NCBI GenBank assembly: GCA_964035545.1
Contig: OZ037768.1
Span: 13,339,675-13,403,674, forward strand
Source of the DNA: Bugula neritina
Lineage: Eukaryota; Animalia; Bryozoa
Length of the DNA: 64,000 bases
Direction of reading: 5' to 3'
In this document: positions 21,835 through 44,490 of the stretch, in pieces
Layout of the letters: each line of letters opens with the position of its first letter
Position numbering within the stretch: the stretch's first letter is position 1
Translations under genes and position numbers: made by a program
Notes under the pieces: model-generated
What the model was told of the DNA's origin: nothing
What the model saw: only the letters and a program-made list of their open reading frames with translations
Databases searched by the model: none

Positions 21835-22467
21835 CTAGCCTGTCTGTGTGTGATCAGTGCTGATCCTCATATCTCTTATTGTTCTTGGGAGAAAACTATA
21901 AAGATACCCATTCTTGTTCGCTCTCACTGATCTGGGAAATCCTGCAACCTGAGACCGAGTCTGTACAGTGCTTGTGGTCCGCTGATCTAGAAAATCATCA
22001 TAGGCAGCACTCAGAGTTGGATGTAGTTCTTCCTTAGACAATATTTTTAGGAGAAGGCTGATGCGTCGGTTTTTCCTCCTTAGATCAAGCGGCTCTAAAC
22101 ACAGCTTTTTCATCTCTTCCCCAATATCAGTTCTTCCTTTGCTGTTAGAGATAAAACGCACAGCACATGTTTGAACATTCTCCATTATATTTATATGATT
22201 TTTGCTAGATGGGTCCCAGGCTGCACTGGCATATTCCAAGTGTGGGAGACAGAGGGCTTTGTAGGCAATAAGCTTTGCTCTCCTGGGGGCCCAGTAGAGT
22301 GAACGTTTTATCATACCCAATTGCCGTTTTGCAACAAGAACCTTTTTTAGGATGTGTTGGTCAAATTTACAGTCTGACTGCAGTGTTACACCAAGGTATT
22401 TGGTTGAGTCAACATGATCCAACACTGATCCACTGAGCTTGTATCGGGGAGTGTCGGTCTTAGGGTT
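21835..22467 (-). mobile_element. 5'-truncated LINE, ORF2 C-terminus
   Basis: KYLGVTLQSD...KLIAYKALCLPHLEYASAAWDP...YSFLPRTIRD, flanked by low-complexity AT microsatellite-like tracts. Confidence 0.92.
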
Positions 22468-24199
22468 AAAGCTGATTATCTTGCTCTTGGAGATGGTAAT
22501 TACTAATGAGTAATACTAATAGTAATAGTATGAATATCACTATCAAATTGAGATTCGGTATTACTATCACAGTATCAGTATCACTATCAGTATCACTGTC
22601 AGTATGAGTATGAGTATCAGGAGGTATGACTATGAATATAAGACTAAATATTACCAATAGTTAGATAAAAACTACGAATCTATGTATTTGGAGTAATTTA
22701 TGATCTATGATACTCTATGCCTAAAACGTTTCAAATCCATTTTGCTTTTGGCACAGAAATACAAGTCAAACATTATATTTAGTGATGGACTTCCAACTTC
22801 ATATTAATTTAATACATAGGGCTAGGCAGACTGTGCTGAATACTGCTAGAAGCAGCACCTAGTTGGAGGTAACAATTTGCACACGTATCGTTGTTCAAGT
22901 CTAAACCCTGCACCCAACTTCGAGATTCTCGAATCAACGCACTCAGTAGCTACCAATTCGGTGCTGCTTCAAGCAGCTACAGCTTGGTACCCGTTGCAGG
23001 TTTCTATTTTAATAGACGATGTTTTCATCGTTTGTACACATAAAAGCCGAGTTTTTGCCATTTGTTTCGCATTTTTACGCGGCCTAGGTTTTACAACCAT
23101 ATTAGCGATCCCGTTTTAGCTAAAAGGTAAAATTGACAACCAACGTGATCTGTTCATTTGAACCCTTTTATAACGAAAGCCAAAATGGAATGCAGGGTGA
23201 TTATTCCGTGATAATTATATTAAATTTAATATAAATATTCCTATATTATATTGTATAAAATTAAATTTTATATAATTGCATATGCTGAAATAAAAATGCA
23301 GGTGTCGAAAGGCCACAGGGCCCGTGTCACGGTGTCAGATAATAATATTAATAATTATTATCTAAATGATTATATTTATGATATTAATTTAAATTATTGA
23401 TATTCATATAGTTACTTACATCAATGGTGACATCGCGCTAGACCGCTAGTGGCATAAGCCTAAAGAGCGCGCCTCAGTTTTTGGTTATGATTGAGCAGTA
23501 GAATAATACTTTTTAACAGTGTATCAAATCTCATAGGTAGGGCATATTCATATTGCTTCAAAGAGGGTGTATTAACCCATTCAGTAATTTGTCATAAGCA
23601 TTTCTTTTTTTGTATTATTTTTAATTTTATGCATGGTGTAACCATCGCAAAAAATAGATATAATCATAATGATAATGATTAAATTTAATGATATTCATAT
23701 TGATAATCATTATGAATGAGTTTATGAATCATTATCAAATTCGATAATAATAAATATTATTATTATAATCAGATTAATTATTCTTGCTGAGTGCCTCTTA
23801 ACAGAAATATATTGTGCAGAAACTCTTTAGTTTGAGTTTTACTTTTAGCTTAAAGTTAATGGTTTTTTATTTGATGATGATGATGAACTCTATATTTGAT
23901 AAAATGATACACGAAAAAAATACCTCTATTTACAGGCAATGATGAAAGGTTAATATTTTCGAATGTATAAAATACAATCTACAGTATAATTGCGTTCTGT
24001 ACAACAGTTTTCACAAATATTATAAGGTTCCTATTGATATAATATTATGAAATACAGTATGAAAATAAAGATTGTATTGAGTATTAGAATGGCAATTATT
24101 TGAGATTTCTTTCAAAGGAGTTATGTCAGTGATTGTGCTGCGTATTATCTTAGGTTTATGTCTGTGGCACTGGTCTCCATTTCATAAACAACAGATGGC

Positions 24200-24470
24200 C
24201 CTAGTCGCCGCAATACCAAACCTCAAGCACCAGTTTGTAACTTTAGGTTATAGCGTTGCCAGTTACGCCCCAGTGGAGGTATAGCCTTGTTATAGCCTGG
24301 CCTTGGCTTGTCATCTGATCTGGGTAATTAGAACATCAGTCTTCTAGTGAGATTCAGGAATAAAATGACTGATACCCAGCACGGTTTTGTTTATGGTCTC
24401 CCCATGATTCATGACGAGCATTGAGGTCGCCAAGTAACATGAGACCATCTACTTTCATGGATGGCATCTG
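24200..24470 (-). mobile_element. LINE APE-endonuclease fragment
   Basis: The minus strand reads LMLLGDLNARHESWGDHKQNRAG, the GD(F/L)NA..W motif, and then degenerates. Confidence 0.8.
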
Positions 24471-24639
24471 GTTTATGATGTTCTGTGTTTTCTGCTCCGA
24501 TATTCCGGTTTTTTATTTACCACTTGGATTTTTTCTTTCTCCTTCTACCCCTTCCTTTTTTCTTTTTTTCCTTCCCTATCTTTTTTTTCAAAATACTGCA
24601 ACTTGTCTACATCATTTTTTTAAAATTTTATTAGTCATT

Positions 24640-26273
24640 TGTTAAATTCTAGACGGCAGCCCCAAGCTGCCTTCGTGACCTCCTACCACCCTTGCGTCAC
24701 ACCAAACGCCGACTCGGCTTGCCCCACACAAGCCAACGCAGTTTGGCTCCCCAAACTGCCAAGCAGTTAACACCAACGACTACACTAGTAGCCCCCAACC
24801 AGTACCACTTTACTGGTAGGCAACTAAACTGAAATTACAAATAAGATTTAAGACTAACACCACCACCACCCGCTAACTGACCCAAAGTTCACTCGTTTCC
24901 AGTATCAACCAGACACGGGAAACTTCGATTGTTCAAACCAGCCTAGACAACTAGCATTCGGCCTGATGTTAATTAAACGCCAGCTGCCCTCGACAGGTCC
25001 AACCTGCCACCCGGCACACATGCACCACTCAGCAACTCTCTTGGGAGAAAGTTGCCACTTTCGGTAAGCTCGGCTTGCTTGATTTCCATCGGGGAAGGTG
25101 TGCCGCCCCAGTCTGCACCTCTCACCAGAAAATCCTGCGCACTGCAGCTGCCTGCAGGTAGCTGCTGATGTAGTGCTTGATGCTCCCACACCGAAAACAC
25201 CCGGACCTCCTGGCTCCCCTTGCACTAGGTGCCTTACGTTTTGTAGTGCAGTCCTTCACTTTGTGAGGACCACCTCAAGGATAGCAAGCATTGCTACCCA
25301 GCTGCTGCTTCCCAGAAGCAACCACACCCTGGCCTACCTTGTTACGGCTGGCCACCGCTCTCCGCTAGACCACCTTGTCTCGCACCCGTGCCAACACTGA
25401 CCAAAAATCGGCGGTGTAGGTGAGGTCGTCGGTCACTGCCCACTCGTGAATTGCAGGCGCAAGCCTTCATAGAGCTGAGCTCAAAAGCTCAGGTCGTTGC
25501 AGGACATGCCAACCTTGCGGCCGAACTGCTCCAAGCGGTTCAAGAAAAGGTCAATGGTGTCACCTTCCATCCTAGTGGACACAAACTTGCGCCATGCCTC
25601 CTGCCTGGGCATAGTATACTTGGCCATGGGGGCTGCCTTCACGACGTCTCACTGGGACGCCTCCCCCACCATCATTCTGTTGTACACGCGGGCAGCATTG
25701 CCGCCCAGCATGTACACTAGGAGATCTGTCGGAGAAATATTCTTCACATGACAGTACCCCTTGTGCTTTGCCAGCCACTCTGAGATATCCTCGCTTCCAT
25801 CTCCGATGAAGGAATTCGCTAATTGACGAACCGTAGTAAGAATTGGTCCTCTAGCCTGGTTTAGCATGGTAGCTAACATCTCCACGTCCACAAGGAATGG
25901 CACAGCCTCAGCTGCTGAGGTTGAAGGCACAGCCATGCTGGCTGCGCTGTCAGCCCCCAAGCTCTGGGCCACATTTCCAGAGTCCACATGTCCTTCCCTA
26001 AGCGTGGACATTTTAAACTAAGTATAATAAGAAAAGTATACAGCCGAAATAGCTTGTTAAATGATAGACGGCAGCTCCAAGTTGCCTTCGTGGCCACTAC
26101 TACCCCTGCGTCACACCCAGCGCCACCTCGGCTTGCCCCACACAAGCCAACGCAGTTTGGCTCCCCAAATTGCCAAGCAGTTAACACTAACGACTACACC
26201 GGTAGCCCCCTACCAGTGCCATTTTACTGGTAGGCAACTAAACTTAAATTACAAATAGGATTAAAGACCAACA
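24640..26273 (-). mobile_element. Small LTR element with two ~220-bp LTRs and a decayed gag only
   Basis: Direct repeats at 24640-24859 and 26055-26273 (TGTT...AACA, about 89% identical by eye). Internal gag from 26011 has FIGDGSEDISEWL and two damaged zinc knuckles (CYP*GGPHKVKDC, CFRCGSIKHYISSY). A G-rich tract precedes the 3' LTR. No TSD seen. Confidence 0.88.
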
Positions 26274-26699
26274 ATAACTAGAATATTATGTATGTGCAAC
26301 TAACTACTTACAGACAATGATAATTAAATTGTGACTAATATAAGTATAATAATATAACTATTCTAAGAGATGACGAAGCAAAATGATAACATAGCAGACC
26401 ACACGTCCTTCATGGAGCAACAGCAATTTTGAAGTGGCCGTGAGTCATCCAACATGGCCGTTCAACCGGAACACACAACTAGCATGGTCGGTCCGGGAGG
26501 ACAACTCACATTATTGTTTATGTATTGTTTTATTTCTGCTCATTCTCAGACATGAAAAAATATTTCCATCACTTCTTATATCTCTGATAGTTTTGGGCCA
26601 AAATGAGTGAAAGTAAGTCGGTGATCATATACTTATAGCTGGCAGGGACTTTTGCTGTTTAGTGTCATAAGAATGAGCAAACTGCAGAGTAGCTTGCAG

Positions 26700-27950
26700 T
26701 GTTAGCTAACACACTGGTTCTCTGAGCCTCAAACAAGTTTAACTCCTCGACTTTCTACGCTCCTGTAAAGTACCTATATTTGTGTCATATCTCAATTTGG
26801 ACATGCTCACTGGTGACTTACTCAATAAATAAAACGTGATTTATTTTGGAACTTTTCAATCTTTAAGTAAGGATCCTAGACCTGGCAGGCATACTAAAGG
26901 TTTTGAACATACCAGAGTTTTATAAGCCACCAATCTGGTTTCAGCGTGAGGAGTTTTCAAAACCTGAGTCAGCATTCCTTGCACGCGACTAGATTTAGAT
27001 ATTATTTTGTTGATAAGTTTGTCAAATTTTGAGTCATTGCTCAATTCTACACAGAAATATGGATGAGAAATGGGACTACTTACTCACTTGTTATTTAAAA
27101 GAATAACTTTGTTTGAAGTTGCTTTCTTCAACAGAAAGAACAACACATTTTTTTAAGTTAAAAAAAGTTGCTCTGTGTGAGACCAGATTTCTAGAATCTA
27201 GATCTGTTGCCAAAACATCACTTTTATTTTGAGTGTTAAACAGAAAGGCGTCATCTGCAAAAAGTCTGCATTGAGATGCAATGCAATTTGGGAGATTATT
27301 TATATAAAAATAAACAACTGCCCGAGAACAGATCCGGGGAACCCCAGAAAATACAGAGCAAGTGTGAGACGGTACACCATCAACCACTACCAGCTGCTTT
27401 CTGTCTGAAAGAAACTAGCGTATCCATGAGATACAAGTAGTGTTTATACCTATTTTGTCCAGCTTGAATAACAATTTTTGATGGTTCACTGAATCAAAAG
27501 CTTTAAAACAATCAAGAATCAAGATCAGTTATTGCACCATTTTCTTCATTTATAGCCCACTCATTGACTGTGTAGACTAGTTGTGTTACACATGATCGGT
27601 GTTTCCGAAAACTAGGTTGGGCATCAGTTGGTAGGTTATTGTTGGCTAGAAAGTGATGTGTATGTAATACATGTTCCAAAAGTTTGCAGGTTATACAAGT
27701 CAATGAGATTGGCCTATACTTGTTCGGTTTCTGTCTTCTCCCTTTTTTATAAACAGGGTTAACTTTAGCTATTTTCCTTATGTTGGGAAGAGAGCTAGTG
27801 GCTATGGGGTAATTAAAAATTGTAGTAGGTGCAGGAAAATACAAAAGGCAAAGATTTTCAAAAGTATACCAGTCAAATTGTCTGGGCTGCAAGACTTCGG
27901 AACTTGGATGTTATTTAGTAATTTTAGCACACCATTCTCCATTATGTTTC
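26700..27950 (-). mobile_element. LINE ORF2 reverse transcriptase, frameshifted
   Basis: KVNPVYKKG...YRPISLTCITCKLLEH...FRKHRSCVTQL; SGVP; CRLFADDA; RLVAYKTLV. Confidence 0.93.
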
Positions 27951-28019
27951 TTTTTGAGTTATTTACTTCATTATAAATGTGCTAACTAAACTATCTTTAA
28001 ATCTTGTATTAGTGAGTGG

Positions 28020-28830
28020 ACACAGGTGCTTCCTATTTTTCCTAATAACTTTACCATCAACCTGGATCCAATAACTGTCAGGAGTGGTGTCCTATTTTAC
28101 AACAGTACCCTGTTTGCCTAAGTCTGAGGGGGAGTTAACCCTTACTAAATCATTAGTCTGTAATTCAGGTAGTCTCTTGGCTTTATATTTTTTGTTCCAT
28201 TTGCCAGCCCTGTTTTTAATGATCATTCGCCTTACGTTCATTATCACCGTTGTCTATCTGATCTACAAATGGTAATCCTAGGTTAGACCAAACCTAAGTT
28301 TTTTCAGTGAATAGCCTGAAGGCAGCAGGGTTGACCTATAGGCTAGTAAGGTAGAATTTTTATCAGTACTTTTCTGCCACAGTCTTTTTATGGTGCACAC
28401 AGCACTTCCAGCTAACTCATTAGACTCTGGGTACCTGGGGCTACTGGTAACTAATGAAAATCCTCTGCACTTAGCGTAATCTCTAAATTTTTTACTAGCA
28501 AAGCAAGTGCCATTATCTGACCTTATTATCTAAGGTATACCAAAGCAAGCAAACGTGGTTTTCAACGTGGTTATAACCAACTGTGTAGTCTAGAACTCAA
28601 TGGCGGGTACCTCAATCCATTTACTGTAGTAATCTATGACCAGGTATAATTGCTTCTCACACGTAAATATGTCAAAACCAACCACCATTCATGGTGGGGA
28701 GGGTAACTCGCTTTCGACCATAGGTTGATGTTTGATGTCTGTACTTTATGCATGTAGAGCATTGCTCGATGTAGGAAGCAATCTCTTTGCTCAGACCTGG
28801 CTACCAAATGTGACGCTGTGCACGTCTGTG
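28020..28830 (-). mobile_element. Gypsy LTR-retrotransposon integrase fragment
   Basis: W*PGLSKEI..YIEQCSTC; LVIDYYSKWIEV; FGIP*IIRSDNGTCFAS; TSSPRYPESN; RKNRKHL. Confidence 0.9.
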
Positions 28831-28855
28831 ACATTTGGAGATGATTTAGTACCCT

Positions 28856-29284
28856 TCATGAATTTTTATCTAAATATATACTACGCAATGGCTCGAGGGC
28901 GACCAAGGCTCGAGGTAGAGCCAGTATTGGGGAGTTGTCCTCATCTCCGTCCGCAGGGCTCTCACCGAGCAGTATGCGCTGCTCCTCCCCGGCGGCGAGC
29001 TGAAGCTCTACCGGGTTAGAGTCAGGGGCGCCGGTGGAAGGGACCTCTGAGGGGAGAGTGGCGCCCTGCTGGCTACTAGGAGCCGAAACAGGGGCCGGTG
29101 GGGGAGGGGAGTCGACACGACTCGCTTCAACTTCCTCAACATCCATATTATCTCCTACAACAGATAGGAGAAGCTGTGACAGACCAGTCTCACTATCGCC
29201 GAAATTCGGCATGCGAGCTAGGTTACAAACTGGGGTCCGAAATGAATCACAGAGAGTGACCGAGCCCACGTCTTGATCTAACAA
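28856..29284 (-). other. GC-rich, Pro/Ser-rich ORF, probably a retroelement accessory region
   Basis: 142-codon open frame in a GC island wedged between TE fragments; no recognisable domain. Confidence 0.35.
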
Positions 29285-29319
29285 GAAATCTTACTAGTAT
29301 TTTCACAAGCTCTACAGTA

Positions 29320-29490
29320 CTAGTGAACATTTAACACTTGTCCATAATTAGACTTCAAAAATTCTAACAAGCTTTTTGTACCATCGACACATTTATTATT
29401 AGCGTGATACCTGTATTGGCATAAATCACACTGTATTCCTCGTTTATGACTTTTTACTTGTTTTTTACATGCCCCACAATTTCCTTTCAT
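29320..29490 (-). mobile_element. PHD-finger N-terminus of a CR1/L2-type LINE ORF1 (truncated)
   Basis: CGACKKQVKSHKRGIQCDLCQYRYHANNKC follows the C4HC3 pattern. Confidence 0.75.
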
Positions 29491-29989
29491 GGTGGTGAAA
29501 GTTAAGTTGATAATCACAACACATTACTATCAGCCAAGAAAAATAAATCAACTACTGGTAAGAAAATGTAAACCAAGAGACAAGAAAATAAATTCAAACC
29601 TTCCTGATCTAGCAGTCCTGTAATACTCTACGACTATAAACACTCTCACTGACAAAACACACAAACGAACAAAAATAACTTTTCCCTTCCTATAATATAT
29701 AATTGAAATTCAAATTTAAGTCTTATTGGCCATGTAATGGTAAGACTAAGTGTTGGCTTAGCCTTATCGCAAGCCTAATGTAAGCTTATTTTTGATCACC
29801 ATCCATCCTTGGCCTATAAATTTGGTTAAATTTCGATTGGTAATCTTATTCAATATCAATTTGAATTTAATATTGCACTAGAATTCTCTTAGCGTCACCC
29901 TTTTTATAGCAAATCTTCAATTTTATCAACATATTTTACTTTATAAAAAAAAGGACGACCTGGCGCCGTGAAACCGCAAAATGTTAGAC

Positions 29990-31250
29990 ATTGCTTCGAA
30001 AATATTATGTTGACGTGTTGGCATTTTTACCAAGGACACTACACTGGGTGATATTTACATAAGCTTTTTGACATGTCACACTCTGCGCTTGTATGGCCTC
30101 TAACATGAAATCTGTCCATAAGACATTTCAGACGCTTCACAAATGGCTGAAATTCATAAGCTCGATCATAGCCTACATACTTTATTGTGTGCCCATCATT
30201 TACCAACTGTAACAGTTGTACAAACAGCTGGCTGGCTGATTTGAAAGTATACATCCCACGTTGATTCATAATTATTCTACCTGATTTGGCCATAGCCATA
30301 ATTCCTGCTGTTTTATGGTGAAATTCAGTTATGTTTGTTAATTTTTGCAACCAATATATTCGTTTTCATATTGTATCTTTATCACATTTCTACTGATAGC
30401 ACCAATACATGACACTGCTTGATCTGCCACATTTATTGTCACTACTATATGTTTGTCATCAATCCCTAAATCCAAAAATTGATGTTCTTTGCAATATATT
30501 GATGGAGTTTTGCTTTTTCCTCCTAAAGTTGTGTGTGTTCAGGCAGCAACTGATTTGTGTTAAGCATTTTTTTCTTAGCTGGAAATATTATGTCGAATCA
30601 GCATAAATTCTTCAGTTGATTTTCTTATTGCCATCACACATAACAAATCCCTCCGCACATTCTTCATTTTGCAAATGTGAGCAACCCATTTACTTTTTAG
30701 TTCAAAAATTATTTGAGCTGCGTCATCTAACACCTTATCTGTGGAAAGCCGTTTGGAAGCTTTGAGTCCTTTGAAAAGCTGGGGTTGTTATTGAAATATT
30801 GTAATAGTTGAGCTATAAATAAACGATTTCAAGTTTGTTTTTGATGAGTTCTCCACTGTATTCACCCATTCCATACAGCTTACTGTATCTTTCGCACAGC
30901 TTACTAAAGCTACGACCCAGTTAAATATCAACTAACAGTTCCTTGATGTAGTCAACATGTAAAGGCCGTTAACTGCCTTGTCACTATAATCTTCTCGTCC
31001 TTTGATCATGTGTAAAATGTTTTTCTGGTGTCTGTATTTCCATATGATGTGAAATATGTCATTTTACATTTGCTGCATGTAGTGTGATACACTTGTGCTC
31101 TTGTCATACCATCTCTTGTGTACACCACAACTTCTGCAGCCCGGTCTTTGTCTATTTTTATAACTTATATTCAAGTAAAGAATAGTTGGAAACAATCAGT
31201 GATATAAAGATGTCTATTTCCTTCTTCATAATACGTAATAGTTGATCTGC
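29990..31250 (-). mobile_element. Decayed KDZ (Kyakuja-Dileera-Zisupton)-type transposase with CxC5/CxC6-like cysteine clusters
   Basis: VVVYTRDG...YHTTCSKC; WVAHIC...CAEGFVMCDGNKKIN*R; KTAGIMA...IKYVGYDRAYEF...MDRFHVRGH...C...CKYHP. Assigned from recalled motifs. Confidence 0.7.
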
Positions 31251-32317
31251 ATGTACTAATGAAATATGTTCAGTGAATGAAGAATATACTTCGGCTACCT
31301 AGGTTGTTGTTGCAATACTTTAAAAATGAACTGAATTAACTGCAATCAACACTGGCTCCTAAAATGACTTTCTATTTTCATTAACTAAAAAATTGTCTGC
31401 TTAATCTATGCTGGATAAAACAATGAGCAGCAGACCTCAATTGATGATTAGGCTATATATCTGAAAAGTTGATAAATATTAGCTGACCTGGTCACAACAT
31501 AGTTTTTTCCAATTAGGAAAACCATATAAAATTTTAAAGGAAGATTGTACACCATCAAATTGTCCTCTCCAATAATCATGAACACGTAAAAACGGCTGCA
31601 CTCGTAGTCACTGTCTTTATGCTTTCCAGCTCCAACCTGGTTTAATATACAACATTGACTTTGTAATGTATTGCCTTTTTCACTAATTAATGAACACCAT
31701 TAAAATTAAAAGGATGCTTTTAAAATTGCTTCAATTGGCTAGCTTTCCACAGGGAGCCATGTAATTATGTAGAGTTTCTGTCAATATCTCCCTACTGTAA
31801 ATTAAGTATATAGCAAAAGTTTTTGCATTTTCTTATGTGAAAACACATTCTGTGCATTACTGAGAAGTTTGCATATTTAATTAAGGTACAGCATTTCACT
31901 ATGTCTTTGCATCTCTCCAAAAAATCTATAGAAACATTTTAAATACAATATACAACTATTCATGATCAAATTTCTAGCATATTAATTATATTGTTTTAAA
32001 TCAGTTTTTAATTGAAACAAAAAGCAGTACATGATGTATAAAATGCAAGTATGTGAAACTCACCTAGTGTGTTAGAATAGATGAACAGAAAAACATGACA
32101 GTAATGGAAAATTGTTTTTCTATATAATATGCTGAATCAGCAGAGCACTCACAGTAATTTTTGTAAGCTCTCCATAGCTTTGAATCTTGGCCAAATGGTC
32201 TTTGATGTAGCCGGTAATCTTTTTCCATATGAAAGGGGTCCTTCTGGCAGCAAAGTATGCATATGCAAACATGGGCATTATTCCATTATTATGTATGTGC
32301 ATACGTGTGTGCATATA

Positions 32318-34780
32318 GGGGAGACCTGGGTAATATGGGCCACTTGAGCGTACAGCCCATACTGGTGCTATCTCTACTATCATACAAATAGATTTTTAAG
32401 CTCCTATACATATGCTTAACTGAGCTATAATCAAACATTGGTAGACCATATCACCCAAAAATTTTGTGAGATTTCGGGTCATGTGAGCCACCACAGACTT
32501 AGTCACATAAAATCAGTTTGTTTGGGTTGAAAATGTGTTTTGCTATCATAAGAATTAATATAAAACAACAGATCTAAAATAAGTGTATAATAGTTATCAA
32601 GTCAATGTGTGACAGCTTTAGGTATTTAACACTGGGTAGCTTTTCATGCTGTCTTGTTACTCTGAATCTGAATTACAGTTGTGGCAGGTGAAAGCTTGGA
32701 CTGCATACGTCAGGTGCCAAATGTTTACATACCACACACAGAACCCCATACCTCTCTTGAATGGCTTTTTGAAAAGGCTCAAAGCAAGCTATGCATATAT
32801 TAAACTCATCGTCCGATTTTTCAGAATCACTTCAATGTTGTGCAATCCGTTTGGCACGTTTCTTCCCTTTGCTTTTATCTACAACGAATGAACTTGTGCT
32901 TGCATTTTGTTCTGATGCATTACTTGGTCTTTGTTTAAGCTTCATTACTTCAGCCTTTTTATAGCTTTTTTCATGGGGTCTGCTTTCATAGGTGACGAAT
33001 TTACCACAGCACTAGCTTGGGATCTTCGCTTCCTTGTTTGCAGCTTGCTACTGATACGAAGTAAAGGTGACAGCTCCACAATTAAGTTGGTTGTTACAGA
33101 TGTTTACTGAGTTGTGGATTGTTGCTGAACAGCTGGATCTTGAACAGAATTCGTCTCTCTATTATCTTCTTCAACATTTTGTGACGGCAATAAAGCTGTT
33201 TGTTCTAACAGCACTTCCCAGTTTTGTTCTGGTGTCAGGGACTCAACTGCTGAAAATTCTTCATCTGAGAAGATCTCCCTATTGAGTGGAACTATGCTTG
33301 TGGCAGCAAACCCAAACTCAGTCAGCTGCATTCTACATGATGCTAAATAAGCTTTGCTGAAGATTGCAGGGGCATTCACAGGTGCTCAGAATTTTCTAGG
33401 TGCTGCAGATGCGAAAGACGAACCTGCTATGCATAATTAGTTTTAGTGGTTTAAGCAAGCTGGCATCTAGTGCTTGCATTCTGTGAGATGTGCTGGGTGA
33501 AATTTTAACAAGCTGGATCTCATTTTGTCTCAAGAGTTCCCCCGATATCAAGGCTGATGTGGCTAGTGTAGTGTGGTGGTTGGCAATGATTAGAACTGGG
33601 TTACTGGGTTGTCTGTAATAGCTTTTGTTTCTGGCTGAAATTGCTGAAGCCACTTTAAAAACAAAGCTTCATTCACCCATCCACTCTCAGAGCGGTAACC
33701 TACAGATCCTGTTGGTGCACCATGCGCCATTCTTACTCTTTCGAAAATAAACATTAGTGGACTTAAAATTCTGGTAGCACCCATACAGCAAATCACTGGG
33801 GTGTTAGGACTACCCGCAACACTGATAATCGCTCTGACCCTTTTTTTACTTTCTCGGCCACAATTTTTGAAGACTTTGCCATAGTGGAAATACTGGTTTC
33901 ATCTATATTGAAAATTCTGGATGGTGGTATGAAAATGAACGGCTAAATTGTCGAAAAAGATTGCGACAGCTTGTCTATTGAACGCTTTCACCCTATTCAT
34001 GGATGTTTCCTCAGGTGTGCAAATGAATAGATATGGATTCCGTCTCAGAAAAGACAAGAACCACTCCTCACTTGCCATTTTCACTTCCTTGTTAAAGGAA
34101 TTGTCACGTTGCTCCTCTCGGCCAGCTAAAACATAAAAATTCATCTCTCATTCTCATGGAAAACTAGCTAAACAAGCTTAAAATGTCATGCAGCTATTTT
34201 TGAGAAGGAAGCTTTTAAAAGAGTCGGGTTCATAAGGGGAATTTATAGGCATTACCTCAAAATCAAAAGCTAATTTCCTCATCAATAACTGTCATTCCAA
34301 AAAATCTTTTCTTTTTTTCTAAATCTCTAAAAAGTGGTTTCCCACCAAGAGAACTTTTTTCCACCTTTTCTGCATCCAAGCATCTTTTTAGCTTGGTCAT
34401 AGGTATTCCAAATTGCCTAGCACATTGATGCAAAGAATTTCCTTTTTTTGCTCTTTCAATAGCTTCTTTTAGTGCCTCCTCACTTCAAGCATTTCCAATA
34501 TTTTGGAATAATATTTAAGCATCTGAAATACATTGCATGAGTGTGAATATTTCAAATACATATTTTATAGCAACTGAATATAAAGTTGTCTAGTCAATAT
34601 TTAAGGGTTTTAATGCTTCAGCATTGTGTGAAAAAATTTAGAAGTAGTATTATTTTCGCCCATACAAATGAATAAACATGCAATTGTCTGAGTGATATGG
34701 TCCGCAGTCCATATCACCCACTAAGTGGTGGACCATATCACCCAAAAATCACGTCGTCAAAATATTAAATTCGCACCAAA
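32318..34780 (-). mobile_element. pogo/Tigger-like (DDE_1) DNA transposon, decayed
   Basis: Psq-type HTH (SLHQCARQFGIP), ASEEWFLSFLRRNP..TPEETSMNRVKAFN, GAPTGS..SESGWVNEALFLKWL, TSHRMQALD and C-terminal PHD remnants. Repeated GACCATATCACCC subterminal motifs lie at ~32445 and ~34690-34745. A candidate end TA|GGGGAGACC is at 32316; the other end was not found. Confidence 0.85.
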
Positions 34781-34859
34781 AGAGAGTGAACGAGTATCAT
34801 ACTATTTGGGTATTTAAACATACCTTCCGGGAAAAATCCAGATGTAGAGAAGAGACTGT

Positions 34860-35960
34860 ATAGAGCAGGATAGCTTTGCCATACAGCTGGCAAGGTTTGA
34901 TAACTTGATGCCGCTCATCTTACATCAAACACTTTCCCTATGCGTTGCAATTGTATGCCTAAACTACCCGCAATATCATCAAGTTTACGCTTTGCTTTAG
35001 GGCTTTGACTGTATGTGCTGTATAGTTGGTCAATCATGGAAGCCACGTGATTGACTTGAGTGCATGAGTCAACAGCGTCACCTATGGAGAGTTCAACTCT
35101 GTGGCACAAGCAGCCCCAAAGAAATACTGTTGGGTATTTGGCCTTTAGACAATAGGACACCACTTTTACTTCATAGCATCGTTGAAGCACCATCTGATCA
35201 TGCTCCAATCAAAATTTGTGATAAAAAGTCATCCTTAAAGCCATAGCTGTTGAGGCATAACAAAACCTTGTCAAAAATATGTTCAGCTGTAAGAGAAAAG
35301 AGCTCTATCAGCTCTAGCCGGAAGTTGAAGCAATCCCCATGAAGCAGAGGCCACCTTGTACATATGTACAATAGCCAACATGACTTCCTACTCACTGTAG
35401 TGAATTTATCTATGATGATAGAGAGCTTTTGTCTGAGCTTTAAGATCTCTTTGCAAAGCCGAGATCGAATTTCTTTAGCAATACAATCAATCATTCCAGT
35501 AGCACTGAATCTAGAATGAAGCCTAGTTCCTAAATTGGTTCCATTTGTTTCTTGTAGCTCACAGAGCTCGGGATACGACGGCAGAGGCCGGCTTTTTTGG
35601 CGAGGGAGTATGCTGTTCTCATAAGCTTGGCTGTTGTCAATTTATATTTATGCTGCTGCTTTTGAAAAGCATTGGTTAAGGGCTTTCTTTCAACTGTTGC
35701 CTCTGTGCCAGCTGCCCATGTCTTTTAAGTTTAACACGAAGTGATGTCAGTTGCCTTCCACGGTTGCTTCCTGAGCAAAATACACTTCCTACTGTCTGCT
35801 CAGAACGCGAGTATGTTCCTTTTCCTTCAGCCTTGTTCATTTTGTAGTTTGTACAAAGCTGACATAGCAACCTACCTTTGTCTGTCACCATCAGCTATGG
35901 CTTCTCAGCTTTTTTAGCTTTCCAAATCTCTCAAAACCAGCAATCTGGTAGGTTAGCATC
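34860..35960 (-). mobile_element. hAT transposase fragment (ZNF862/KIAA1586-like)
   Basis: LSIIIDKFTTVSRKSC; DGASTML*SKSGV; CLCHRVELSIGDAV; YSQSPK; GKVFDVR*AASS. Confidence 0.85.
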
Positions 35961-37082
35961 GGCTTTGTCCTCTAAGCCATCGTCACCTTTCTCGTCTGAT
36001 GCCACATTGGCAGTAGCAGCTTCTGCTCCATATAATCAACGGTATATGTAAATGTAAGCTTGACGCTATTAAAAGGCACACAAAAGGCAAGACAATAAAG
36101 AAAATAGGCTGTAGTTAATAAGTTGCAATGATTGTCGAAGATAAAAGAAACATGCAATGGTCTTGATAGTGAGGGCTCATCATTGTTTACAGTAGTATTA
36201 AACTCTAACTGTTTCGCTGTAATTCAGAAATATGTAAAGAAATTAAAGCTAAGAATTTTGCAAGTCTTCCAACTGAACAAATTAAGAACAGCTTAGCCTT
36301 AGTAATCAACAGCATACAATAGACCCTGATACCCTATTTTTATGTTTGTTAAGTAGTCCCAAGCTTAAATAATAATTCTATAAATAACTGTATGCTCTGG
36401 TCACAGAATTCATTATTTACATTCTCATGATGATGATGATAGTAATTATGATTATGATGTAATGGTAGTTCAGTAGAGTAGTGGTAATGTACCTTTTTAG
36501 CACGAGCCATAATTGAATCAGAGTGGCAAATAGTAGTAGTACATGTATGTAGTAGTAGAAAATTAAAAATTGTAGTGAACTAGGCTGTGATTTGGGCAAT
36601 AAATCCTCACTGATGTGATGTCCTTTATTGTATTAATAGTCTAAGATTACACTGGTTGGCATCATTTGACAGTAATTGACATTGAGTGACATCGTCAAGA
36701 CTACAATTGCAATTCAAAACTTACAAAATCTCAGCATAAACATATATGAACAATATTATAACTACAAACAGTTGCAATCCTCAAAAAAGAAACAATATAA
36801 TTAATATAAATGACTTACTTATTTTTGCTCTATACAAATATCAACTAGTTCACTAGCTCCTGCTATTATCAAGTTCCAAATATTTGTTAAGTAGCAAGGA
36901 CTAGGCTGTAGAAAGCTTTTCTTTAAAGGTGCTTAATATAGCTAAGATAGCTGACCAAACTAACGCTAATTTCACTACAATAATAATAATAATGATTACT
37001 AGTATTGATAACTCATGACAAGAGGATGATAACAATACACTACTATTAATAATAATACACTATGATAATATTACTATTGTTA

Positions 37083-37640
37083 TTACTTTTTCCTCTGCTT
37101 TCTTTTGGGTGCCCCATCTTTGCGCAGAGCAGCTTTGGGCTGGGGAAGAATTAACTTGATATCAGACAAGCCAAATATGACGTGGCAAAAAAGCATTCTC
37201 ACCTGCATCTGGCCAAACTCACATTTTGCTGCTTGCGTTTTCAGCTTTTTAACAGAAAGGTCTAAGGGCTCCCCATTAGATTGACTCAAAGACCAAAATA
37301 CAATTGTTTCATACAGACTGTTTTTCCTAGGGTTGCAATAAGCCTCAAACTTTGCCAGAACATCCTCATCCTCCAAATCATTAGTTATTTCTTCAGTCGC
37401 AACTCAAACTGGCTGAAGATCTCGTATGCCTCTTCACTAGCACAATAAATCATTATAGCCACTTGCCTCTTGGAAATGGTCACATTCCCGGCGGGTCAGA
37501 ACCATCTGCCCTCTTTATTAACATAATTAAATTTACGGCCTATAAATAGTTCTGAAATGATCTTTTCCATTTTCTTCAATTTTTCGCAACATTGCCATCA
37601 AAGGATAATCGCCTGGAGGTTTCACTCCCTCCATCATAAA
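37083..37640 (-). mobile_element. Gypsy gag fragment
   Basis: VLAKFEAYCNPRKNSLYE..F...Q..GE.....KLKTQAAKCEFG...VIFGL. Confidence 0.85.
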
Positions 37641-37739
37641 CATCAACGGTAAAAAACAAAATCAAACCAACCAACAGTTGTAGTAGTTTTGTGGGTTTAT
37701 TTGAAATAGGTTAAGCAGTCTGCATGCCAGCACTATTCT

Positions 37740-38700: not shown

Positions 38701-39035
38701 CGTGTAACAAAATATTTAAAACAAAAGAAAGCAGCCTTTTAAAAAAAGCTTTTTGACAATACCAAGACATTGCCCTCTTGTAAGCTACGTTTTCTGGCAG
38801 TGTTTAGATGAAGGTATAATTGGTTGCAATGATCTCTCCCTGAAGGTAAGCAAAATATTGTAAGAAGTATGGACAAAAACACAAACATAAAATACTTGAT
38901 TGACATCAAATTTTGACAAAGAAGTAACATAGATAGCAAATACCATTCAAGAATTATTTCAAACAAGTCTGATATCAAAACACGTATAATTTGAAATAGA
39001 TTTGCACTTTTGCATAGTCATTCTTGGGTGGTATG

Positions 39036-41282
39036 TAGGCCTGCACGGTGTCAGACTGCACTGCCAAATGATTGAATGTGGTTAAAAATAACCATACATC
39101 GAAAAACATCGAAATTTGGAGTTGTGTCCCCTTTTTTATTCGATGTAGTTCGATGTCGGCTTTATTGGGGAAGCGACTACTCCCACCGACACGCTTAGAC
39201 AACTCCGAATCATGTCGTATCAATGTACTAATGTATTAGCATATGCACCTTATTTTATAACACTGGCTACCAACTCATATTTCAGATTCAGAAAATTGGA
39301 TGGGAAAGCTGTTTCTAGGCCATTCTTGAAATAGACTACTGCACTACACTGTTAACACTAACAATGGCTACACTGCTTTATCAAATCTGTTTCACTGCCT
39401 GTGTGATTTTCAACCACTGTAGCATACAGTTGACAGCTGTTAAGATAATTCACACTGCTTAGAGTTAGTCACTCTATGGATACCTCAGTATGACAGCAAG
39501 TTCCTTATATTTAAATCTTTCACGACAAAAATACGCTAACAACTATAGGAAGCGAGTTTAACCTGCTAACATCGAAAACAATCAAAATGAGTAGTCAAAA
39601 GGTCTTCTCTTCATCTCAAGTAGAAAGATTTTAAAAATTGCAAAATAGAGGAGTGTGTTAGCTCAGAAGCAATCGAACCTCAGGCCTATCAGGCATTGAT
39701 AAAAGTTACGGATTATGTGCAGCTGAAAATTATTACGTTACATTCAAAAATTTGACAGCTTCAACTAAAACAGATTTTGACTATGATAGTTGACTAGTTT
39801 TGTTGAACTCTCCAGGTCATAAATGCAAGCTTTATCAATTAAATAAAACGAAAACAAAACATCAGCTTATTATATCATATACGGCTGGATACCATAATAT
39901 ACGCATGCAAGTGGTCACAAGTTTGTTTTAATGTCTGCACTTCATTCCGGCTTTTAAATGCTAGGACTGTTAGCATGTTCACTATAGTAGGTTTGAGACT
40001 GCAACGCTTCTTGCTGACAATATGGCCTGACAGCGAGAACAGTCTCTCAGATGCCACACTAGAGGCACAGACACTGAAGACACTTTTTGCAATCTCACTG
40101 TATGTAGGAAATTCACACTTGTGAGTCTGCCACCAGGTAGTAATCTCGTTCTGCGCCTCACAAGTCAGACTCAGCAGGAATTCGAGCTGAAAATTTAAGC
40201 AAAGCATTCAATTGCAACATATCACAAGATATATTGAATATGAAATTGTCAAGTATGAATATTCAGCTGTGTATATATATAACTGCATAAATCTCAGTTT
40301 AAAATATTACTAACTGGTACTCTTATGTCATGTCACTACTTCTCGTTTTGATTTCTCCTCTGGAGTCAGAGAGCCACTTTGGGTCTGTGACAGAGCTCCA
40401 ACATTTTTTTGCTTACTCAACAGCATTGCTGCTAGGAAGGATTTCTTCGGCGCTCGCGATTCTGCAAATAAATTGACAAGTACAATCATGAATATAATCT
40501 GTGTAGCCTGACCAGGGAGTATGGCAACCTCATTGGCCTGACTGGCAATGGTTCATTATTATAGATAATCATTTGAATAATTATTAGGCCTACTACCTCA
40601 GTATACTCAGACTGAGATTCTAAATAGATTCTACTACCTTAGAACAATATTTTTTATTAGTATTAAGAATAAAATCAAATCAATGTGATTATTTATGATA
40701 ATAATAGTAACAATAATCATAGACTCTATAGACCATCGCATAGATAGTCAATAGTGATAATTTAGTTTGAATGGATAAATAAATTAATAATACTTACTAA
40801 TAATTAATATTATTATTATTACTGCATGCAAACTTTTATAAGTCACCATAAAATTAGCCAACTCCTGTCCCACCTTTAGTTAAGTTGGTATAGAAAACCA
40901 GCTAACTCGACACCAACAGCAAAACATTACTCACCGATTGATCAATCATTTGAACGTCATTATCAGCTTCAGACATTTTTCTTGCTCTGCTGCTCTTTTT
41001 TCACCGCCTTTTCTTCTCATACGCTAACAATAGTCTGAAGAACTAACTCCATTTTATGACACAGCAGCTATTTTACAAATTCTAATACTCCTAACGGAGC
41101 GGCATAACGAACTAATTTAAGAAGGCACGCAAAGAAAAATTAATTATAAAGAGGGAGAGCAACTCCAAAACACCGAAACTTTGGTCGATGGCTTTCGGTT
41201 GTTAATAAACTGATAATCAGTGATTTGATTGGTAGGTCATCAACATAAACATCGTTTACCATCGAACCATCGTGCAGGCCTA
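39036..41282 (-). mobile_element. Internally deleted hAT transposon with TIRs and an 8-bp TSD
   Basis: TIRs TAGGCCTGCACGGTG / CATCGTGCAGGCCTA; exact TSD GTGGTATG at 39028-39035 and 41283-41290; dimerisation domain WWQTHKCEFP...ASSVASERLFS at 39875-40190. Confidence 0.95.
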
Positions 41283-41546
41283 GTGGTATGTGCTGCACAT
41301 GTATTACATTTCGAACATAATAATATTGTAGGTAGAATTGTAGGAAAGATGCAGCGTAAAGCAGTAATATATATGAATATACAATAGTGGCTTGTCAGTC
41401 AGCTTGCTAGCTGTAGTAGCTCTCACTAGAAAGTGGTTGATTGAAGATAGCAGCGGCAAGCCTACTCTGAGAAAGAATGCGGCTTGCAATGCTATTCAGT
41501 AATGCAGAGCTCTGGTTTATAAATAAGTCATAAAAATGTGTATTTT

Positions 41547-44490
41547 TTAATAATATTGTGACAGCTTATCCTGATCTGAACAAAGCAGTAGAGAAGCTTT
41601 ATAACTGACGATAAAAAATTGTGAGTCAGATCTATGATACTGATACAGGGTTTCATTTGACTGCGCTAATGCATCACAGGCACAAGTAACACAGCTTTCT
41701 ATCTGTAGTCGAATATCATCTGCCATGTGAGGCCGAAACACAGCGTTCCTTATTTGCCTCACAGTAGCAGCCGTTCTTTGTTGGCCCGTATGCAACTTCT
41801 TGAGTATTTCCGGATGCATCCTGGTTGGAGCAATGAGCCTGAATCCTTTGTATATAATCCCACCGAGAACAGGCAGGTCATCTCTGTATGAGAAATATAG
41901 TTGAGGTAAAACATGTACATTAGTGAGTTTCTGTGCCCACCCCATGGTTATCATTACCTGGACTGCATCAAACTCAGAATCTGTTCTAGTCTCTTGCTGA
42001 ATATTTAAGTCTGTAGTCTCCGATACAGGGAGGTCCTTCTTCAGGTTTGCCGTGCTTAGATCTGACATAAAGGATTTAAGTTGATTTACTGTAAAGATCT
42101 ACTCATCTGAAATCTTGCCAACAGCATCTCCCACAGAATCTCTGGATAACATGTCCATTCCGCAGTTATTTGTTCAGAGCCGGGTCTGTAGGTCACGTTC
42201 ATTGAATAGCACTTCAGAGCATGCAGCATAGACTGCAACCTCTTCGGAGCTTTATGCAAAGGCTTTTTAAATATTGGCTCAAGAGGCCCATGGCTCAGTG
42301 TTATGTTTCTTGTTTTGTTGTGATAATATAAATCAGAAGTAGTATGTGTAGTGTATGACTGTATTGATAGAGCACTAGCAGGCAACTAACTAACAAGTAA
42401 AACAGGGATGAGTGAATACAATGACAACTGGTCATGTGGTAATAATAGGCAAATAAACATTTTACATAAGAATGAATGACAAACCACTAATGAGAATGAG
42501 TTTATAATGAACAAATATATTACAGAACTAAGCTGCTAGTCAGATTATGTAATTGTAAGAGTATCTATACTTATGTATCACCAACCACAAAACAGATAAT
42601 GCTTACCTGTATCTGTGTGCAGCATCAACTATGTTTAAATACCCATCGATGTTACCGACATACGGATGCAGAGACTTACTCAAACTGTTTTGAGTTTGAA
42701 AATCAACTTCATTGCCAACACCATCAACAGACCTGGCACCTACGTAAATCCAATGACAACACATAATTTAAAATGTTCAACACAACTGAAAGTTAGATGA
42801 CGATTAGATGCCTATCATTGAACCAGGAAGAAATGAATTTGCCTTTCACAGTTACAGTTAAATGTGTACAATGACATGAGTAACACAAGTGCAGTAATCA
42901 ATACTATATTACCTGTGATGATTTGAAAAGTATTAAACATGTAGTATGATCACTAGAGACGATGACATCTGTTAGTTATGAAACTCTTTTCACTGGAGAG
43001 GTAAAAATAGTGTTTCTGTTTCACTGTAAGTGTTTCTAAAGCAGACAAAAAGGAGAAAATATGGCATAGAAAACTACTTCTAGTGCCTTTCATGAACTAA
43101 ACCTCTTGAATATGAAACTCTTCCATCTGTAAAAGATGACTGTCTAGCTCAGGGAACAGATTGATTTACCCAGTGCAAGACTTTGCTAAGTTTACACATG
43201 TATGCAGTATGAAAATTGGAACAAATCTCAAGCATAGGCTAAAAATCTTAAATAAAAACCAATTTTCATTCTCAAATCTGATATTGAAGTTATTTCATAA
43301 TAAAATAATAATCGTACCAATATGATTTTGCATTAATTACTGAACAAAAAGATGCCTCAACTGTTATGTTGTGATAATATGAATTTGAAGCAGTTTGTGT
43401 AGTATATGACTGTATTGATAGAGCACTAGCAGGCAACTGACTAACAAGTGAAACAGGGATGAGTAAATACAATGAGAACTGGTCTTGTGGTAATAATAAG
43501 CAAATAACAGTTTACATAAAAATGAACGACAAACCACTAATGAGAACGAGTTTATAATGAACAAATATATTACAGAACTAAGCTGCTAGTCAGGTTATGT
43601 AATTGTAAGAGTATCTATAAGTATGTATCAGTCAGTGTGTACAGTCACTTTGGGGTTTCCAAATACATACTGATCAAATTTTTGTATGCCAAATATGATC
43701 ACAAGCAGCTCAATTCCGATGGGTGCATAAATCTTTTCACTGTCCGTCAAACTTCTGGATGCATAACACCAGTAAGCCATCCTGAATCAACACTGCACCC
43801 AAGCCTTCGCTACTAGCATCAGTCTGCACTATGACTGGTTTCTTAGCTTGAAAGTACTTCAAGATGCCAGCATCAGTTATGAGCTGTTGAGTTGCTTCAA
43901 AGTTCATTTTTTTAATCAAAAGTCCAAACAAATCCTTTGCCTGACAAACCAATGACCCTCCATAGTGGTTCACATTGTGCCGAACAATGTGGGACAAACT
44001 TTGACATGTAGTTCTCAAGAATCGCCGCACACCATCACTTTCAGTAGGAGCTGACATTTTCTGTATCGCTGTTACTTTACTTGGATCTGGCTTCATACCC
44101 TCATCCGATATGATGTGTTCAATATAAGGCAGTAAATCCATCAGGAACTTGTACTTATCTTTGTTGAGCCTCAGATTTACTTGTCTAGCTCAGGTCAACA
44201 GCATTTCAAGTTTCTGGTTGTGATTCTGGACGGCTTCCTCATATGTTGGCCCTTTTCCATATATTAGTATGTCGTCAGCAGCAACCGTCACTCCACTTGA
44301 GCCATCAAGTGTATTAGAGAGCCATCTTTGGAATTTTTCAGGGCTAGAGGACAGACCAAATGGTATTTGCAACCACTTCATCTTCCCAAAAGGTGTCCAA
44401 AATGTTGTAAGATCACTTGATTCCGCACTAAGTTTGACCTGAAGGAACCCATCTTTGGCATCACACAGTGAAAAAACCTTAGCTCCATGC
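41547..44490 (-). mobile_element. Gypsy pol (RT, RNase H, integrase zinc finger), split by a nested insertion at 42299-43630
   Basis: GAKVFSLCDAKDGFLQV...TTFWTPFG...PFGLSSSPE...AADDILIYG; QTDASSEGLGAVL; VTVHT|HGPLEPIFKK; LHTGQQ...CVTC. Confidence 0.95.
42299..43630 (-). mobile_element. Non-autonomous LTR element: two ~270-280-bp LTRs around 781 bp lacking gag/pol
   Basis: Direct repeats at 42299-42580 and 43362-43630 (TGTTATG...TGTATCA), flanked by CTCAG/GTCAG (near 5-bp TSD). Removing it restores the RNase H HTDH motif apart from one base. Strand inferred from LTR composition. Confidence 0.88.

What the first reader, a model, noticed from the sequence alone, without database searches (positions are those of the whole stretch)
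21835..44490. Strand-polarised transposon graveyard: candidate uni-strand (flamenco-like) piRNA cluster
Seen: about 23 kb of nested, decayed fragments from unrelated classes (LINEs, Gypsy, gag-only LTR, KDZ, pogo, two hATs). Every orientable coding fragment lies on the minus strand, about 12 independent insertions, including DNA transposons that should insert in either orientation. The only plus-strand relics are at the edges (20689 and 45180). Counting those, 12 vs 2 gives a two-sided binomial p of about 0.013. Established: uni-strand piRNA clusters such as Drosophila flamenco are diverse TE fragments oriented antisense to one long transcript. Inference: a plus-strand precursor, perhaps starting divergently from the SLC35A promoter region (~20-21 kb), would yield antisense piRNAs against many TE families.
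Basis: partly seen in the sequence, partly recalled or inferred. Interest (0 to 1): 0.85.

Follow-up and report, generated by a model that had tools for sequence, protein, structure and literature searches.

The report
One-strand transposon pile between two genes
A 23-kb gap between two bryozoan genes holds about ten separate transposon remnants that all point the same way, which is the layout of a piRNA source locus, but no RNA data could be reached, so chance and ordinary transcription remain live explanations.

Summary
Between a minus-strand SLC35A-type transporter gene (17.1-19.97 kb) and a plus-strand GPCR gene (from about 49.5 kb), window 21.7-44.6 kb is a mosaic of transposon remnants. 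I found 9 well-supported and 2 weaker independent coding fragments: LINE x2-3, four LTR-retroelement pieces, KDZ, pogo and hAT x1-2. All are on the minus strand. None of 147 plus-strand ORFs of 38 aa or more hit a transposon domain. ORFs of 100 aa or more split 16 minus to 2 plus. The only plus-strand relic I could confirm is a LINE RT piece at 20699-20917.

Locally the run is unlikely (p about 0.001-0.004). Under random orientation, though, a 216-Mb transposon-rich genome should hold roughly 2-90 such runs, and the scan has flagged at least 7 similar loci in this genome (one followed up, s1-441661, also without RNA).

My odds are: uni-strand piRNA source 0.35, chance 0.30, another plus-strand transcription unit 0.25. 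The block is far smaller than flamenco-type clusters and more mixed in class. It is a candidate, not a discovery.

The parts
17170..19970 (-). Left flanking gene: SLC35A-type nucleotide-sugar transporter exons, with the 5' coding exon ending at about 19946-19970
   Evidence: Nuc_sug_transp, E 2.2e-18, on 19138-19542; exon-like ORFs listed
20699..20917 (+). LINE RT relic, the only confirmed plus-strand transposon fragment in the intergenic gap
   Evidence: tblastn with LINE ORFs of this genome, E 2.5e-7
21101..23950 (.). 3/6-nt periodic low-complexity tract, the only strong one in the window, split by LINE-A. It may mark the promoter or first-intron zone.
21694..22506 (-). LINE-A: a young, 5'-truncated LINE 3' end
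   Evidence: tblastn E 1.4e-53; more than 20 genome copies at 97-100% identity
24357..24512 (-). Weak LINE endonuclease fragment
   Evidence: Exo_endo_phos_2, E 2.4e-4, below the curated cut-off
24639..26273 (.). Small LTR-like element: 221-bp direct repeats (89% identical) around a GC-rich core. It cannot be oriented.
   Evidence: Self-blastn; GC 0.49; genome copies at 79-82%
26571..27910 (-). LINE-B: an old LINE RT fragment
   Evidence: RVT_1, E 4.4e-7; tblastn E 1.2e-35
27989..28893 (-). LTR-retroelement integrase fragment
   Evidence: Integrase_H2C2 at 28675-28800; rve at 28281-28529; genome copies at 81-82% define its borders
28897..29523 (-). 3' ORF of a different LTR retroelement, plus a C1/PHD-like zinc-finger ORF
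   Evidence: Sixteen homologues, E down to 4e-43; in related contigs the ORF lies downstream of RT-RNaseH-rve on the same strand; a separate set of genome copies; C1_1, E 4.3e-6
30044..32285 (-). KDZ-type DNA transposon remnant
   Evidence: CxC5, E 8e-8, above the cut-off, at 31009-31164; Atlas lead to KDZ, score 0.78; genome copies at 74-76%
32311..34828 (-). pogo-type element. Its two ends lie next to each other in about 20 short deletion-derivative copies elsewhere in the genome.
   Evidence: HTH_psq 8e-4 and CENP-B_N 1e-3 at 34266-34484, with colinear weak DDE_1 at 33399-33898; copy structure
34835..37089 (-). Probable hAT #1, interrupted by a 413-bp MITE at 36569-36981
   Evidence: Atlas DUF4371 (hAT RNase-H-like), score 0.93, a lead only; 84% identical copy on C8; 30-nt terminal inverted repeats of the MITE
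37086..37640 (-). LTR-retroelement gag fragment
   Evidence: 784 relatives; the match falls at residues of about 75-165 of gag-pol polyproteins carrying RVT_1/RNaseH/integrase; 85% identical copy
39036..41288 (-). hAT #2
   Evidence: Dimer_Tnp_hAT, E 1.8e-16, at 39878-40207; contiguous copies at 76-92%
41550..44564 (-). Gypsy-type pol (RT, RNase H, integrase zinc domain), split by an insert of about 1.25 kb at 42386-43630
   Evidence: RVT_1 1.6e-11, RT_RNaseH_2 5.3e-9, Integrase_H2C2 4.8e-7; RT_RNaseH 1.6e-9 at 43631-43786; 270-bp direct repeat 42311-42580 / 43362-43630
49520..57736 (+). Right flanking gene: rhodopsin-type GPCR, transcribed away from the block
   Evidence: 7tm_1, E 1.8e-5, on 57224-57736; N-terminal and TM-like ORFs

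Best explanation
SHOWN. Window 21.7-44.6 kb is a gene-free gap between two divergently transcribed genes. It is filled by at least 9 (up to 11) independent insertions from five superfamilies and of very different ages. Every coding remnant is on the minus strand.

INFERRED. The leading single reading is a uni-strand piRNA source locus. A Pol II transcript would start in the promoter zone shared with the SLC35A-type gene (about 20-24 kb, where the window's only strong periodic tract lies). It would run on the plus strand through the block, so every transposon piece would be read antisense. It would then be cut into piRNAs that guide PIWI proteins against LINE, Gypsy-type, hAT, pogo and KDZ transcripts. 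Insertions in the other orientation would be lost or never fixed.

The 0.35 confidence is for this piRNA reading. The broader claim, that some plus-strand transcript shaped the orientation, I put at about 0.6.
For: - Strand uniformity: 9-11 independent minus-strand fragments and no transposon domain among 147 plus-strand ORFs. The two-sided chance of all pointing one way is 0.004 for 9 fragments and 0.001 for 11.
- The bias covers DNA transposons (KDZ, pogo, hAT), which have no known orientation preference on insertion.
- It holds across ages: LINE-A has 97-100% identical copies, while other pieces are 74-92% identical to their nearest copies.
- No host gene lies inside the block, and a promoter-side gene start abuts its left end.
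- Most fragments belong to multi-copy families still present across the genome.
- The genome has at least 6 Piwi-domain loci, including a four-copy tandem array. Bryozoans are reported to have PIWI1 and PIWI2 (PMC11114477).
- The scan noted at least 7 similar piles of 19-27 kb in this genome. These are leads, not support.
Against: - There is no RNA evidence of any kind.
- At 23 kb the block is far below the 227-1,085 kb of flamenco-type clusters. It is mixed in class rather than Gypsy/ERV-enriched (PMC10643416).
- Plus-strand poly(A) hexamers are not depleted (24 AATAAA plus 18 ATTAAA on plus vs 16 plus 14 on minus).
- Most fragments are old (74-85% identical to their nearest copies), so many derived piRNAs would match targets poorly.
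- Random orientation would give N/2^k runs of length k or more among N orientable fragments. For 5,000-47,000 fragments that is about 10-92 runs of 9 or more and 2-23 runs of 11 or more (RVT_1 alone has 2,192 first-look candidates). That is the same order as the number of loci the scan flagged.
- Young intact RT copies lying within 50 kb of each other show no clear co-orientation (8 same vs 4 opposite, my hand count; low power).
Confidence: 0.35

Rival explanations
1. Chance run. The gap is an ordinary landing zone for transposons between two gene starts. The uniform orientation is a random run picked out after the fact from a scan of the whole genome (3,374 windows).
For: Expected chance runs genome-wide are about 10-92 for 9 or more fragments and 2-23 for 11 or more (using counts and the window's own density). 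That is comparable with the roughly 8 loci flagged. Two of the 11 fragments are weakly supported. Neighbouring young RT copies are 8 same vs 4 opposite, not different from 1:1. There is no positive sign of plus-strand transcription.
Against: The run includes every orientable fragment between the promoter zone and the next gene, across five superfamilies and a wide age range. Real chance runs would also need to be this compact, which lowers the expected count. An earlier follow-up reports about 15 co-oriented remnants at another locus (s1-441661), which is harder to get by chance. That note is unverified here.
Confidence: 0.3
2. Another plus-strand transcription unit. The block would be a long 5' intron of the downstream GPCR, used from a distal promoter near 20-24 kb, or a lncRNA or upstream-antisense transcript from the SLC35A-type promoter. 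Sense-oriented insertions bring poly(A) and splice signals and are purged, which leaves antisense ones. No piRNA processing is needed.
For: The next gene downstream is on the plus strand (7tm_1; ORFs). The transposons are antisense to it. Antisense bias of transposons in introns is established knowledge.
Against: Known intronic bias is moderate (roughly 55-65% antisense, from my own knowledge) and weak for DNA transposons, so 9-11 of 11 is more extreme than expected. No exon or splice evidence links 20-24 kb to the GPCR. The plus strand holds 42 poly(A) hexamers.
Confidence: 0.25
3. Mechanistic insertion bias. A regional asymmetry such as replication-fork direction would favour one orientation at the moment of insertion.
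For: Three of the fragments are LINEs, for which a modest lagging-strand preference has been described in other animals (my own knowledge, not tested here).
Against: It would not act on cut-and-paste elements (KDZ, pogo, hAT) or LTR elements, which make up 8 of the 11 fragments. Reported effects are small. The cumulative GC skew shows no switch bracketing the block.
Confidence: 0.05

Closest known systems
Drosophila flamenco and flam-like unistrand piRNA clusters (PMC10643416)
   Same: A gene-flanked, gene-free stretch in which transposon fragments lie almost entirely on one strand, proposed to be read antisense from a single promoter at one end.
   Different: Those clusters are 227-1,085 kb, are enriched for Gypsy/ERV elements that alone drive the bias, and were validated by small-RNA-seq. 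This block is 23 kb, mixes LINE, LTR, KDZ, pogo and hAT, and has no RNA data.
Promoter-sharing or genic piRNA clusters (for example mammalian pachytene clusters with bidirectional promoters; the 'promoter hijacking' idea, PMC13252550, title and abstract only)
   Same: The block abuts the 5' end of the SLC35A-type gene.
   Different: Pachytene clusters are transposon-poor and defined by A-MYB-driven transcription (my own knowledge). Nothing here shows a bidirectional promoter.
Antisense orientation bias of transposons inside introns of host genes
   Same: The transposons are antisense to the nearest downstream plus-strand gene. Selection against sense poly(A) and splice signals gives the same direction of bias.
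   Different: The known bias is partial and weak for DNA transposons. Here it is complete, and the block is not shown to be intronic.
Other one-strand transposon piles noted in this genome (s1-441661, s1-467140, s1-456821, s1-449165, s1-469296, s1-481312, s1-449203)
   Same: Piles of 19-27 kb, strand-uniform, mixed transposon content. Several lie between genes and one between divergent genes, as here.
   Different: These are unverified AI notes on other DNA. The one follow-up also lacked RNA data.

Membership tests
flamenco-type uni-strand piRNA cluster | Transposon fragments overwhelmingly in one orientation across the locus | tested here: met
   9-11 minus-strand fragments and no plus-strand transposon domain within 21.7-44.6 kb
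flamenco-type uni-strand piRNA cluster | Abundant 24-32 nt, 1U-biased small RNAs mapping to one strand only | not testable with these tools
flamenco-type uni-strand piRNA cluster | A single Pol II promoter at one end and a long continuous precursor transcript | not testable with these tools
   No RNA or CAGE data. The only hints are a periodic tract at 21.1-23.95 kb and the adjoining gene 5' end.
flamenco-type uni-strand piRNA cluster | Size of hundreds of kb (227-1,085 kb in PMC10643416) | tested here: not met
   The block is about 23 kb and is bounded by genes at 19.97 kb and 49.5 kb
flamenco-type uni-strand piRNA cluster | Enrichment for Gypsy/ERV elements, with the strand bias driven by them | tested here: not met
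   Only 4 of 11 fragments are LTR-retroelement pieces. The rest are LINE, KDZ, pogo and hAT. An env gene was not searched for.
flamenco-type uni-strand piRNA cluster | PIWI-clade machinery encoded in the genome | tested here: inconclusive
   Piwi-domain exons at 6 or more loci, but AGO and PIWI clades were not separated. The literature reports PIWI1 and PIWI2 in Bryozoa (PMC11114477).
intronic antisense transposon bias | The block lies inside an intron of a gene transcribed on the strand opposite to the transposons | not testable with these tools
   A plus-strand GPCR lies downstream, but no transcript model or RNA links it to an exon upstream of the block

The most novel reading that the evidence does not exclude
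This block and the other strand-uniform piles of roughly 20-27 kb noted in the same genome would form a family of compact, promoter-adjacent uni-strand piRNA clusters. They would trap every transposon class, cut-and-paste DNA transposons included, in antisense orientation. To my knowledge no piRNA cluster has been described in Bryozoa; my one paper search surfaced none, so these would be the first. They would be a miniature, class-agnostic counterpart of flamenco.
Probability: 0.3. Interest if true: 0.6.

Novelty: new member of a known kind. Interest (0 to 1): 0.35.

Why it matters
If small RNAs confirm it, this would give bryozoans, a phylum with no piRNA cluster described to my knowledge, a set of compact uni-strand clusters recognisable from sequence alone. 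It would also show that the orientation filter acts on DNA transposons as well as retroelements. If it is chance or an ordinary intron effect, the lesson is methodological: one-strand runs of about ten fragments are expected several times over in a transposon-rich genome and should not be scored as clusters without a genome-wide control.

Tried and rejected
I did not try further or go round it, so read laying was never run.
2. Transcript contigs. The look-up of encoding contigs on a block ORF found no record.
3. Genome-wide control.
4. Substitute control from metagenome contigs. The search for related loci with a LINE ORF returned a single unrelated 2.4-kb contig.
5. The only control achieved. 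A hand count of young RT copies within 50 kb of each other gave 8 same vs 4 opposite. This is too few to decide anything.
6. Poly(A)-hexamer asymmetry and base skews show no plus-strand transcript signature. They are confounded by the transposons' own composition.
7. CpG observed/expected is low everywhere, 0.33-0.8, so it is uninformative.
8. tRNA and Rfam scans meant to orient SINE-like repeats found nothing.
9. The search for homologous proteins gave nothing for the KDZ ORF, and only unnamed fragments at 56-75% identity, with no Pfam domains, for hAT #1.
10. I considered that several fragments might be one split Gypsy element and rejected it. Two separate Integrase_H2C2 regions exist. The 3' ORF lies on the wrong side of the neighbouring integrase. 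Genome copies of adjoining pieces fall at different loci.


Full report
**Context**

The window is G000:C4:13339675-13403674 of a 216-Mb, 321-contig genome. An earlier follow-up in this scan calls it a bryozoan. The window is AT-rich (GC about 0.30-0.35), rising to 0.34-0.49 across 22-46 kb.

Flanking genes:
- Left: a minus-strand SLC35A-type nucleotide-sugar transporter. Nuc_sug_transp scores E 2.2e-18 on 19138-19542, and the 5' coding exon ends near 19.95 kb.
- Right: a plus-strand rhodopsin-type GPCR. Its N-terminal ORF starts at about 49.5 kb, and 7tm_1 scores E 1.8e-5 on 57224-57736.

The block therefore fills the gap between two divergently transcribed genes.

**Checking the observation**

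I extracted every stop-to-stop ORF on both strands and scanned each strand's set against Pfam in the same way.

| Strand | ORFs scanned | Transposon families hit |
|---|---|---|
| Plus | 77 (55 aa or more) + 70 (38-54 aa) | none; only noise at E 0.003-0.04 |
| Minus | 63 + 70 | RVT_1 x2, RT_RNaseH/_2 x2, Integrase_H2C2 x2, rve, Dimer_Tnp_hAT, HTH_psq/CENP-B_N, CxC5/CxC4, Exo_endo_phos_2 |

Per-ORF scans placed the minus-strand hits.
- tblastn with LINE ORFs taken from this genome's own copies found three LINE pieces: 20699-20917 (+), 21865-22506 (-) and 26571-27853 (-).
- The ORF at 37086-37403 (-) has 784 relatives. It aligns to residues of about 75-165 of gag-pol polyproteins carrying RVT_1, RNase H and integrase, so it is a gag fragment.
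- The ORF at 28859-29290 (-) has 16 homologues. In related metagenome contigs this ORF sits just downstream of RT-RNaseH-rve on the same strand, so it is a retroelement 3' ORF.
- The protein Atlas gave a DUF4371 (hAT) lead for 35201-35641 (score 0.93) and a KDZ lead for 30042-30365 (score 0.78). The KDZ call is backed by the CxC5 hit above Pfam's cut-off.
- ORFs of 100 aa or more are 16 on minus and 2 on plus. Excluding the GC-rich core the split is 13 to 0. Stop-trinucleotide counts are nearly equal on the two strands.

**Independence of the fragments**

DNA searches of the genome give element borders, because adjoining pieces match different sets of loci. The map is:

| Element | Window coordinates | Note |
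|---|---|---|
| LINE-A | 21694-22506 | more than 20 copies at 97-100% identity, so a recent insertion |
| Weak LINE endonuclease piece | 24357-24512 | below the Pfam cut-off |
| LTR-like element | 24639-26273 | 221-bp direct repeats; cannot be oriented |
| LINE-B | 26571-27910 | old |
| Integrase fragment | 27989-28893 | |
| Retroelement 3' ORF | 28897-29523 | lies upstream of that integrase on the minus strand, so it belongs to another element |
| KDZ | 30044-32285 | |
| pogo | 32311-34828 | its two ends are adjacent in about 20 short derivative copies elsewhere |
| Probable hAT #1 | 34835-37089 | carries a 413-bp MITE with 30-nt inverted ends |
| gag fragment | 37086-37640 | |
| hAT #2 | 39036-41288 | |
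| Gypsy-type pol | 41550-44564 | split by an insert of about 1.25 kb |

The plus-strand relic claimed at 45180 got no Pfam support on the ORFs I scanned. It belongs to another note and I did not pursue it.

**Is it more than chance?**

Locally, yes. The two-sided chance that all fragments share a strand is 0.004 for 9 and 0.001 for 11. Counting the plus-strand LINE relic, 9 vs 1 gives 0.021 and 11 vs 1 gives 0.006 (my arithmetic).

Genome-wide, not clearly. With N orientable fragments and random strands, about N/2^k maximal runs reach length k. RVT_1 alone has 2,192 first-look candidates, and the window's own density would scale to about 40,000 fragments. For N between 5,000 and 47,000 the expectation is 10-92 runs of 9 or more and 2-23 runs of 11 or more. 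Requiring runs to be compact would lower these numbers.

The scan has flagged at least 7 similar piles in this genome. One was followed up and also lacked RNA data.

I could not run the proper control. A hand count of young intact RT copies lying within 50 kb of each other gives 8 same vs 4 opposite, which has low power.

**What it is**

Shown: a real mosaic of transposons of many classes and ages, uniformly oriented, in a promoter-side intergenic gap.

Sequence proxies do not help.
- The plus strand of the block has 24 AATAAA and 18 ATTAAA hexamers, against 16 and 14 on minus.
- Base skews are confounded by the transposons' own composition.
- CpG depletion is uniform.

One local feature may bear on a start site. 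I confirmed that the tract exists but not that link. It would fit either an SLC35A 5' intron or the first intron of a plus-strand unit.

**Explanations and odds**

| Explanation | Odds |
|---|---|
| Uni-strand piRNA source read on the plus strand from the SLC35A-side promoter zone | 0.35 |
| Chance run | 0.30 |
| Another plus-strand transcription unit that purges sense insertions (long GPCR 5' intron, lncRNA or upstream-antisense RNA) | 0.25 |
| Insertion-mechanism bias | 0.05 |

- The piRNA reading is favoured by the completeness of the bias, by its reach over cut-and-paste elements and over very different ages, and by the presence of Piwi-domain genes at 6 or more loci, one of them a four-copy tandem array. 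Bryozoan PIWI1 and PIWI2 are reported in PMC11114477.
- It is weakened by the missing RNA, the old age of most fragments (74-85% identical to their nearest copies), and the multiple-testing argument above.
- The insertion-mechanism reading is weak because 8 of the 11 fragments are not LINEs.

**Comparison with the known**

Flam-like clusters were defined by size (227-1,085 kb), Gypsy/ERV enrichment, strand bias and small-RNA validation (PMC10643416). This block meets only the strand-bias criterion. It fails on size and on Gypsy dominance, and the remaining criteria cannot be tested here.

It may work like flamenco, but it should not be filed as a flamenco-type cluster. At best it is a small, mixed-class uni-strand candidate.

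No stretch was reported as human-like.

Noticed in passing
window 21101-23950: This is the only strong 3/6-nt periodic low-complexity tract in the 64-kb window. It lies just upstream of the SLC35A-type coding start and is split by a young LINE 3' end at 21694-22506.
   Followed up: partly
window 42311-43630: A 270-bp direct repeat (92% identical) brackets 780 bp inside the Gypsy pol. A 95% identical copy at G000:C4:12939588-12940648 is circularly permuted relative to it. This suggests a tandem or rolling-circle-type unit of about 1.05 kb rather than a simple LTR pair.
   Followed up: partly
window 32311-32595 and 34458-34828: The two ends of the pogo-type element are directly adjacent in about 20 copies of roughly 600 bp elsewhere in the genome (79-84% identical). 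These look like a MITE family derived from this pogo by internal deletion.
   Followed up: partly
window 24639-26273: A small element with 221-bp direct repeats (89% identical) surrounds a core of about 49% GC in a genome of about 33% GC. ORFs are open on both strands and there is no Pfam hit. Copies at 72-82% identity exist on other contigs.
   Followed up: no
G000:C2:12874319-12917145: Four tandem Piwi-domain gene copies lie within 43 kb. Further Piwi-domain loci are at C4:9.39 Mb, C2:7.08 Mb and C216. I did not assign them to the AGO or PIWI clade.
   Followed up: no
window 46256-46598: A palindromic MITE-like repeat with an internal inverted repeat at 46261-46345. It has dozens of copies in both orientations genome-wide (80-87% identical).
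   Followed up: no
window 49721-49845: A 36-bp tandem repeat (3.5 copies, 95% matches) lies inside the ORF that appears to encode the GPCR N-terminus.
   Followed up: no
G000 genome-wide: Very many intact, near-identical retroelement copies. More than 100 RVT_1 hits share the same score and sit in open frames of 1,100-1,580 aa, and LINE families have 900-960 aa frames. This points to very recent or ongoing transposition.
   Followed up: no
L032-L035 (JGI samples 3300002729 and 3300003318): Metagenome contigs carry Gypsy-type elements with the same extra ORF downstream of integrase as the fragment at window 28897-29290. The contigs probably come from a related bryozoan host.
   Followed up: partly
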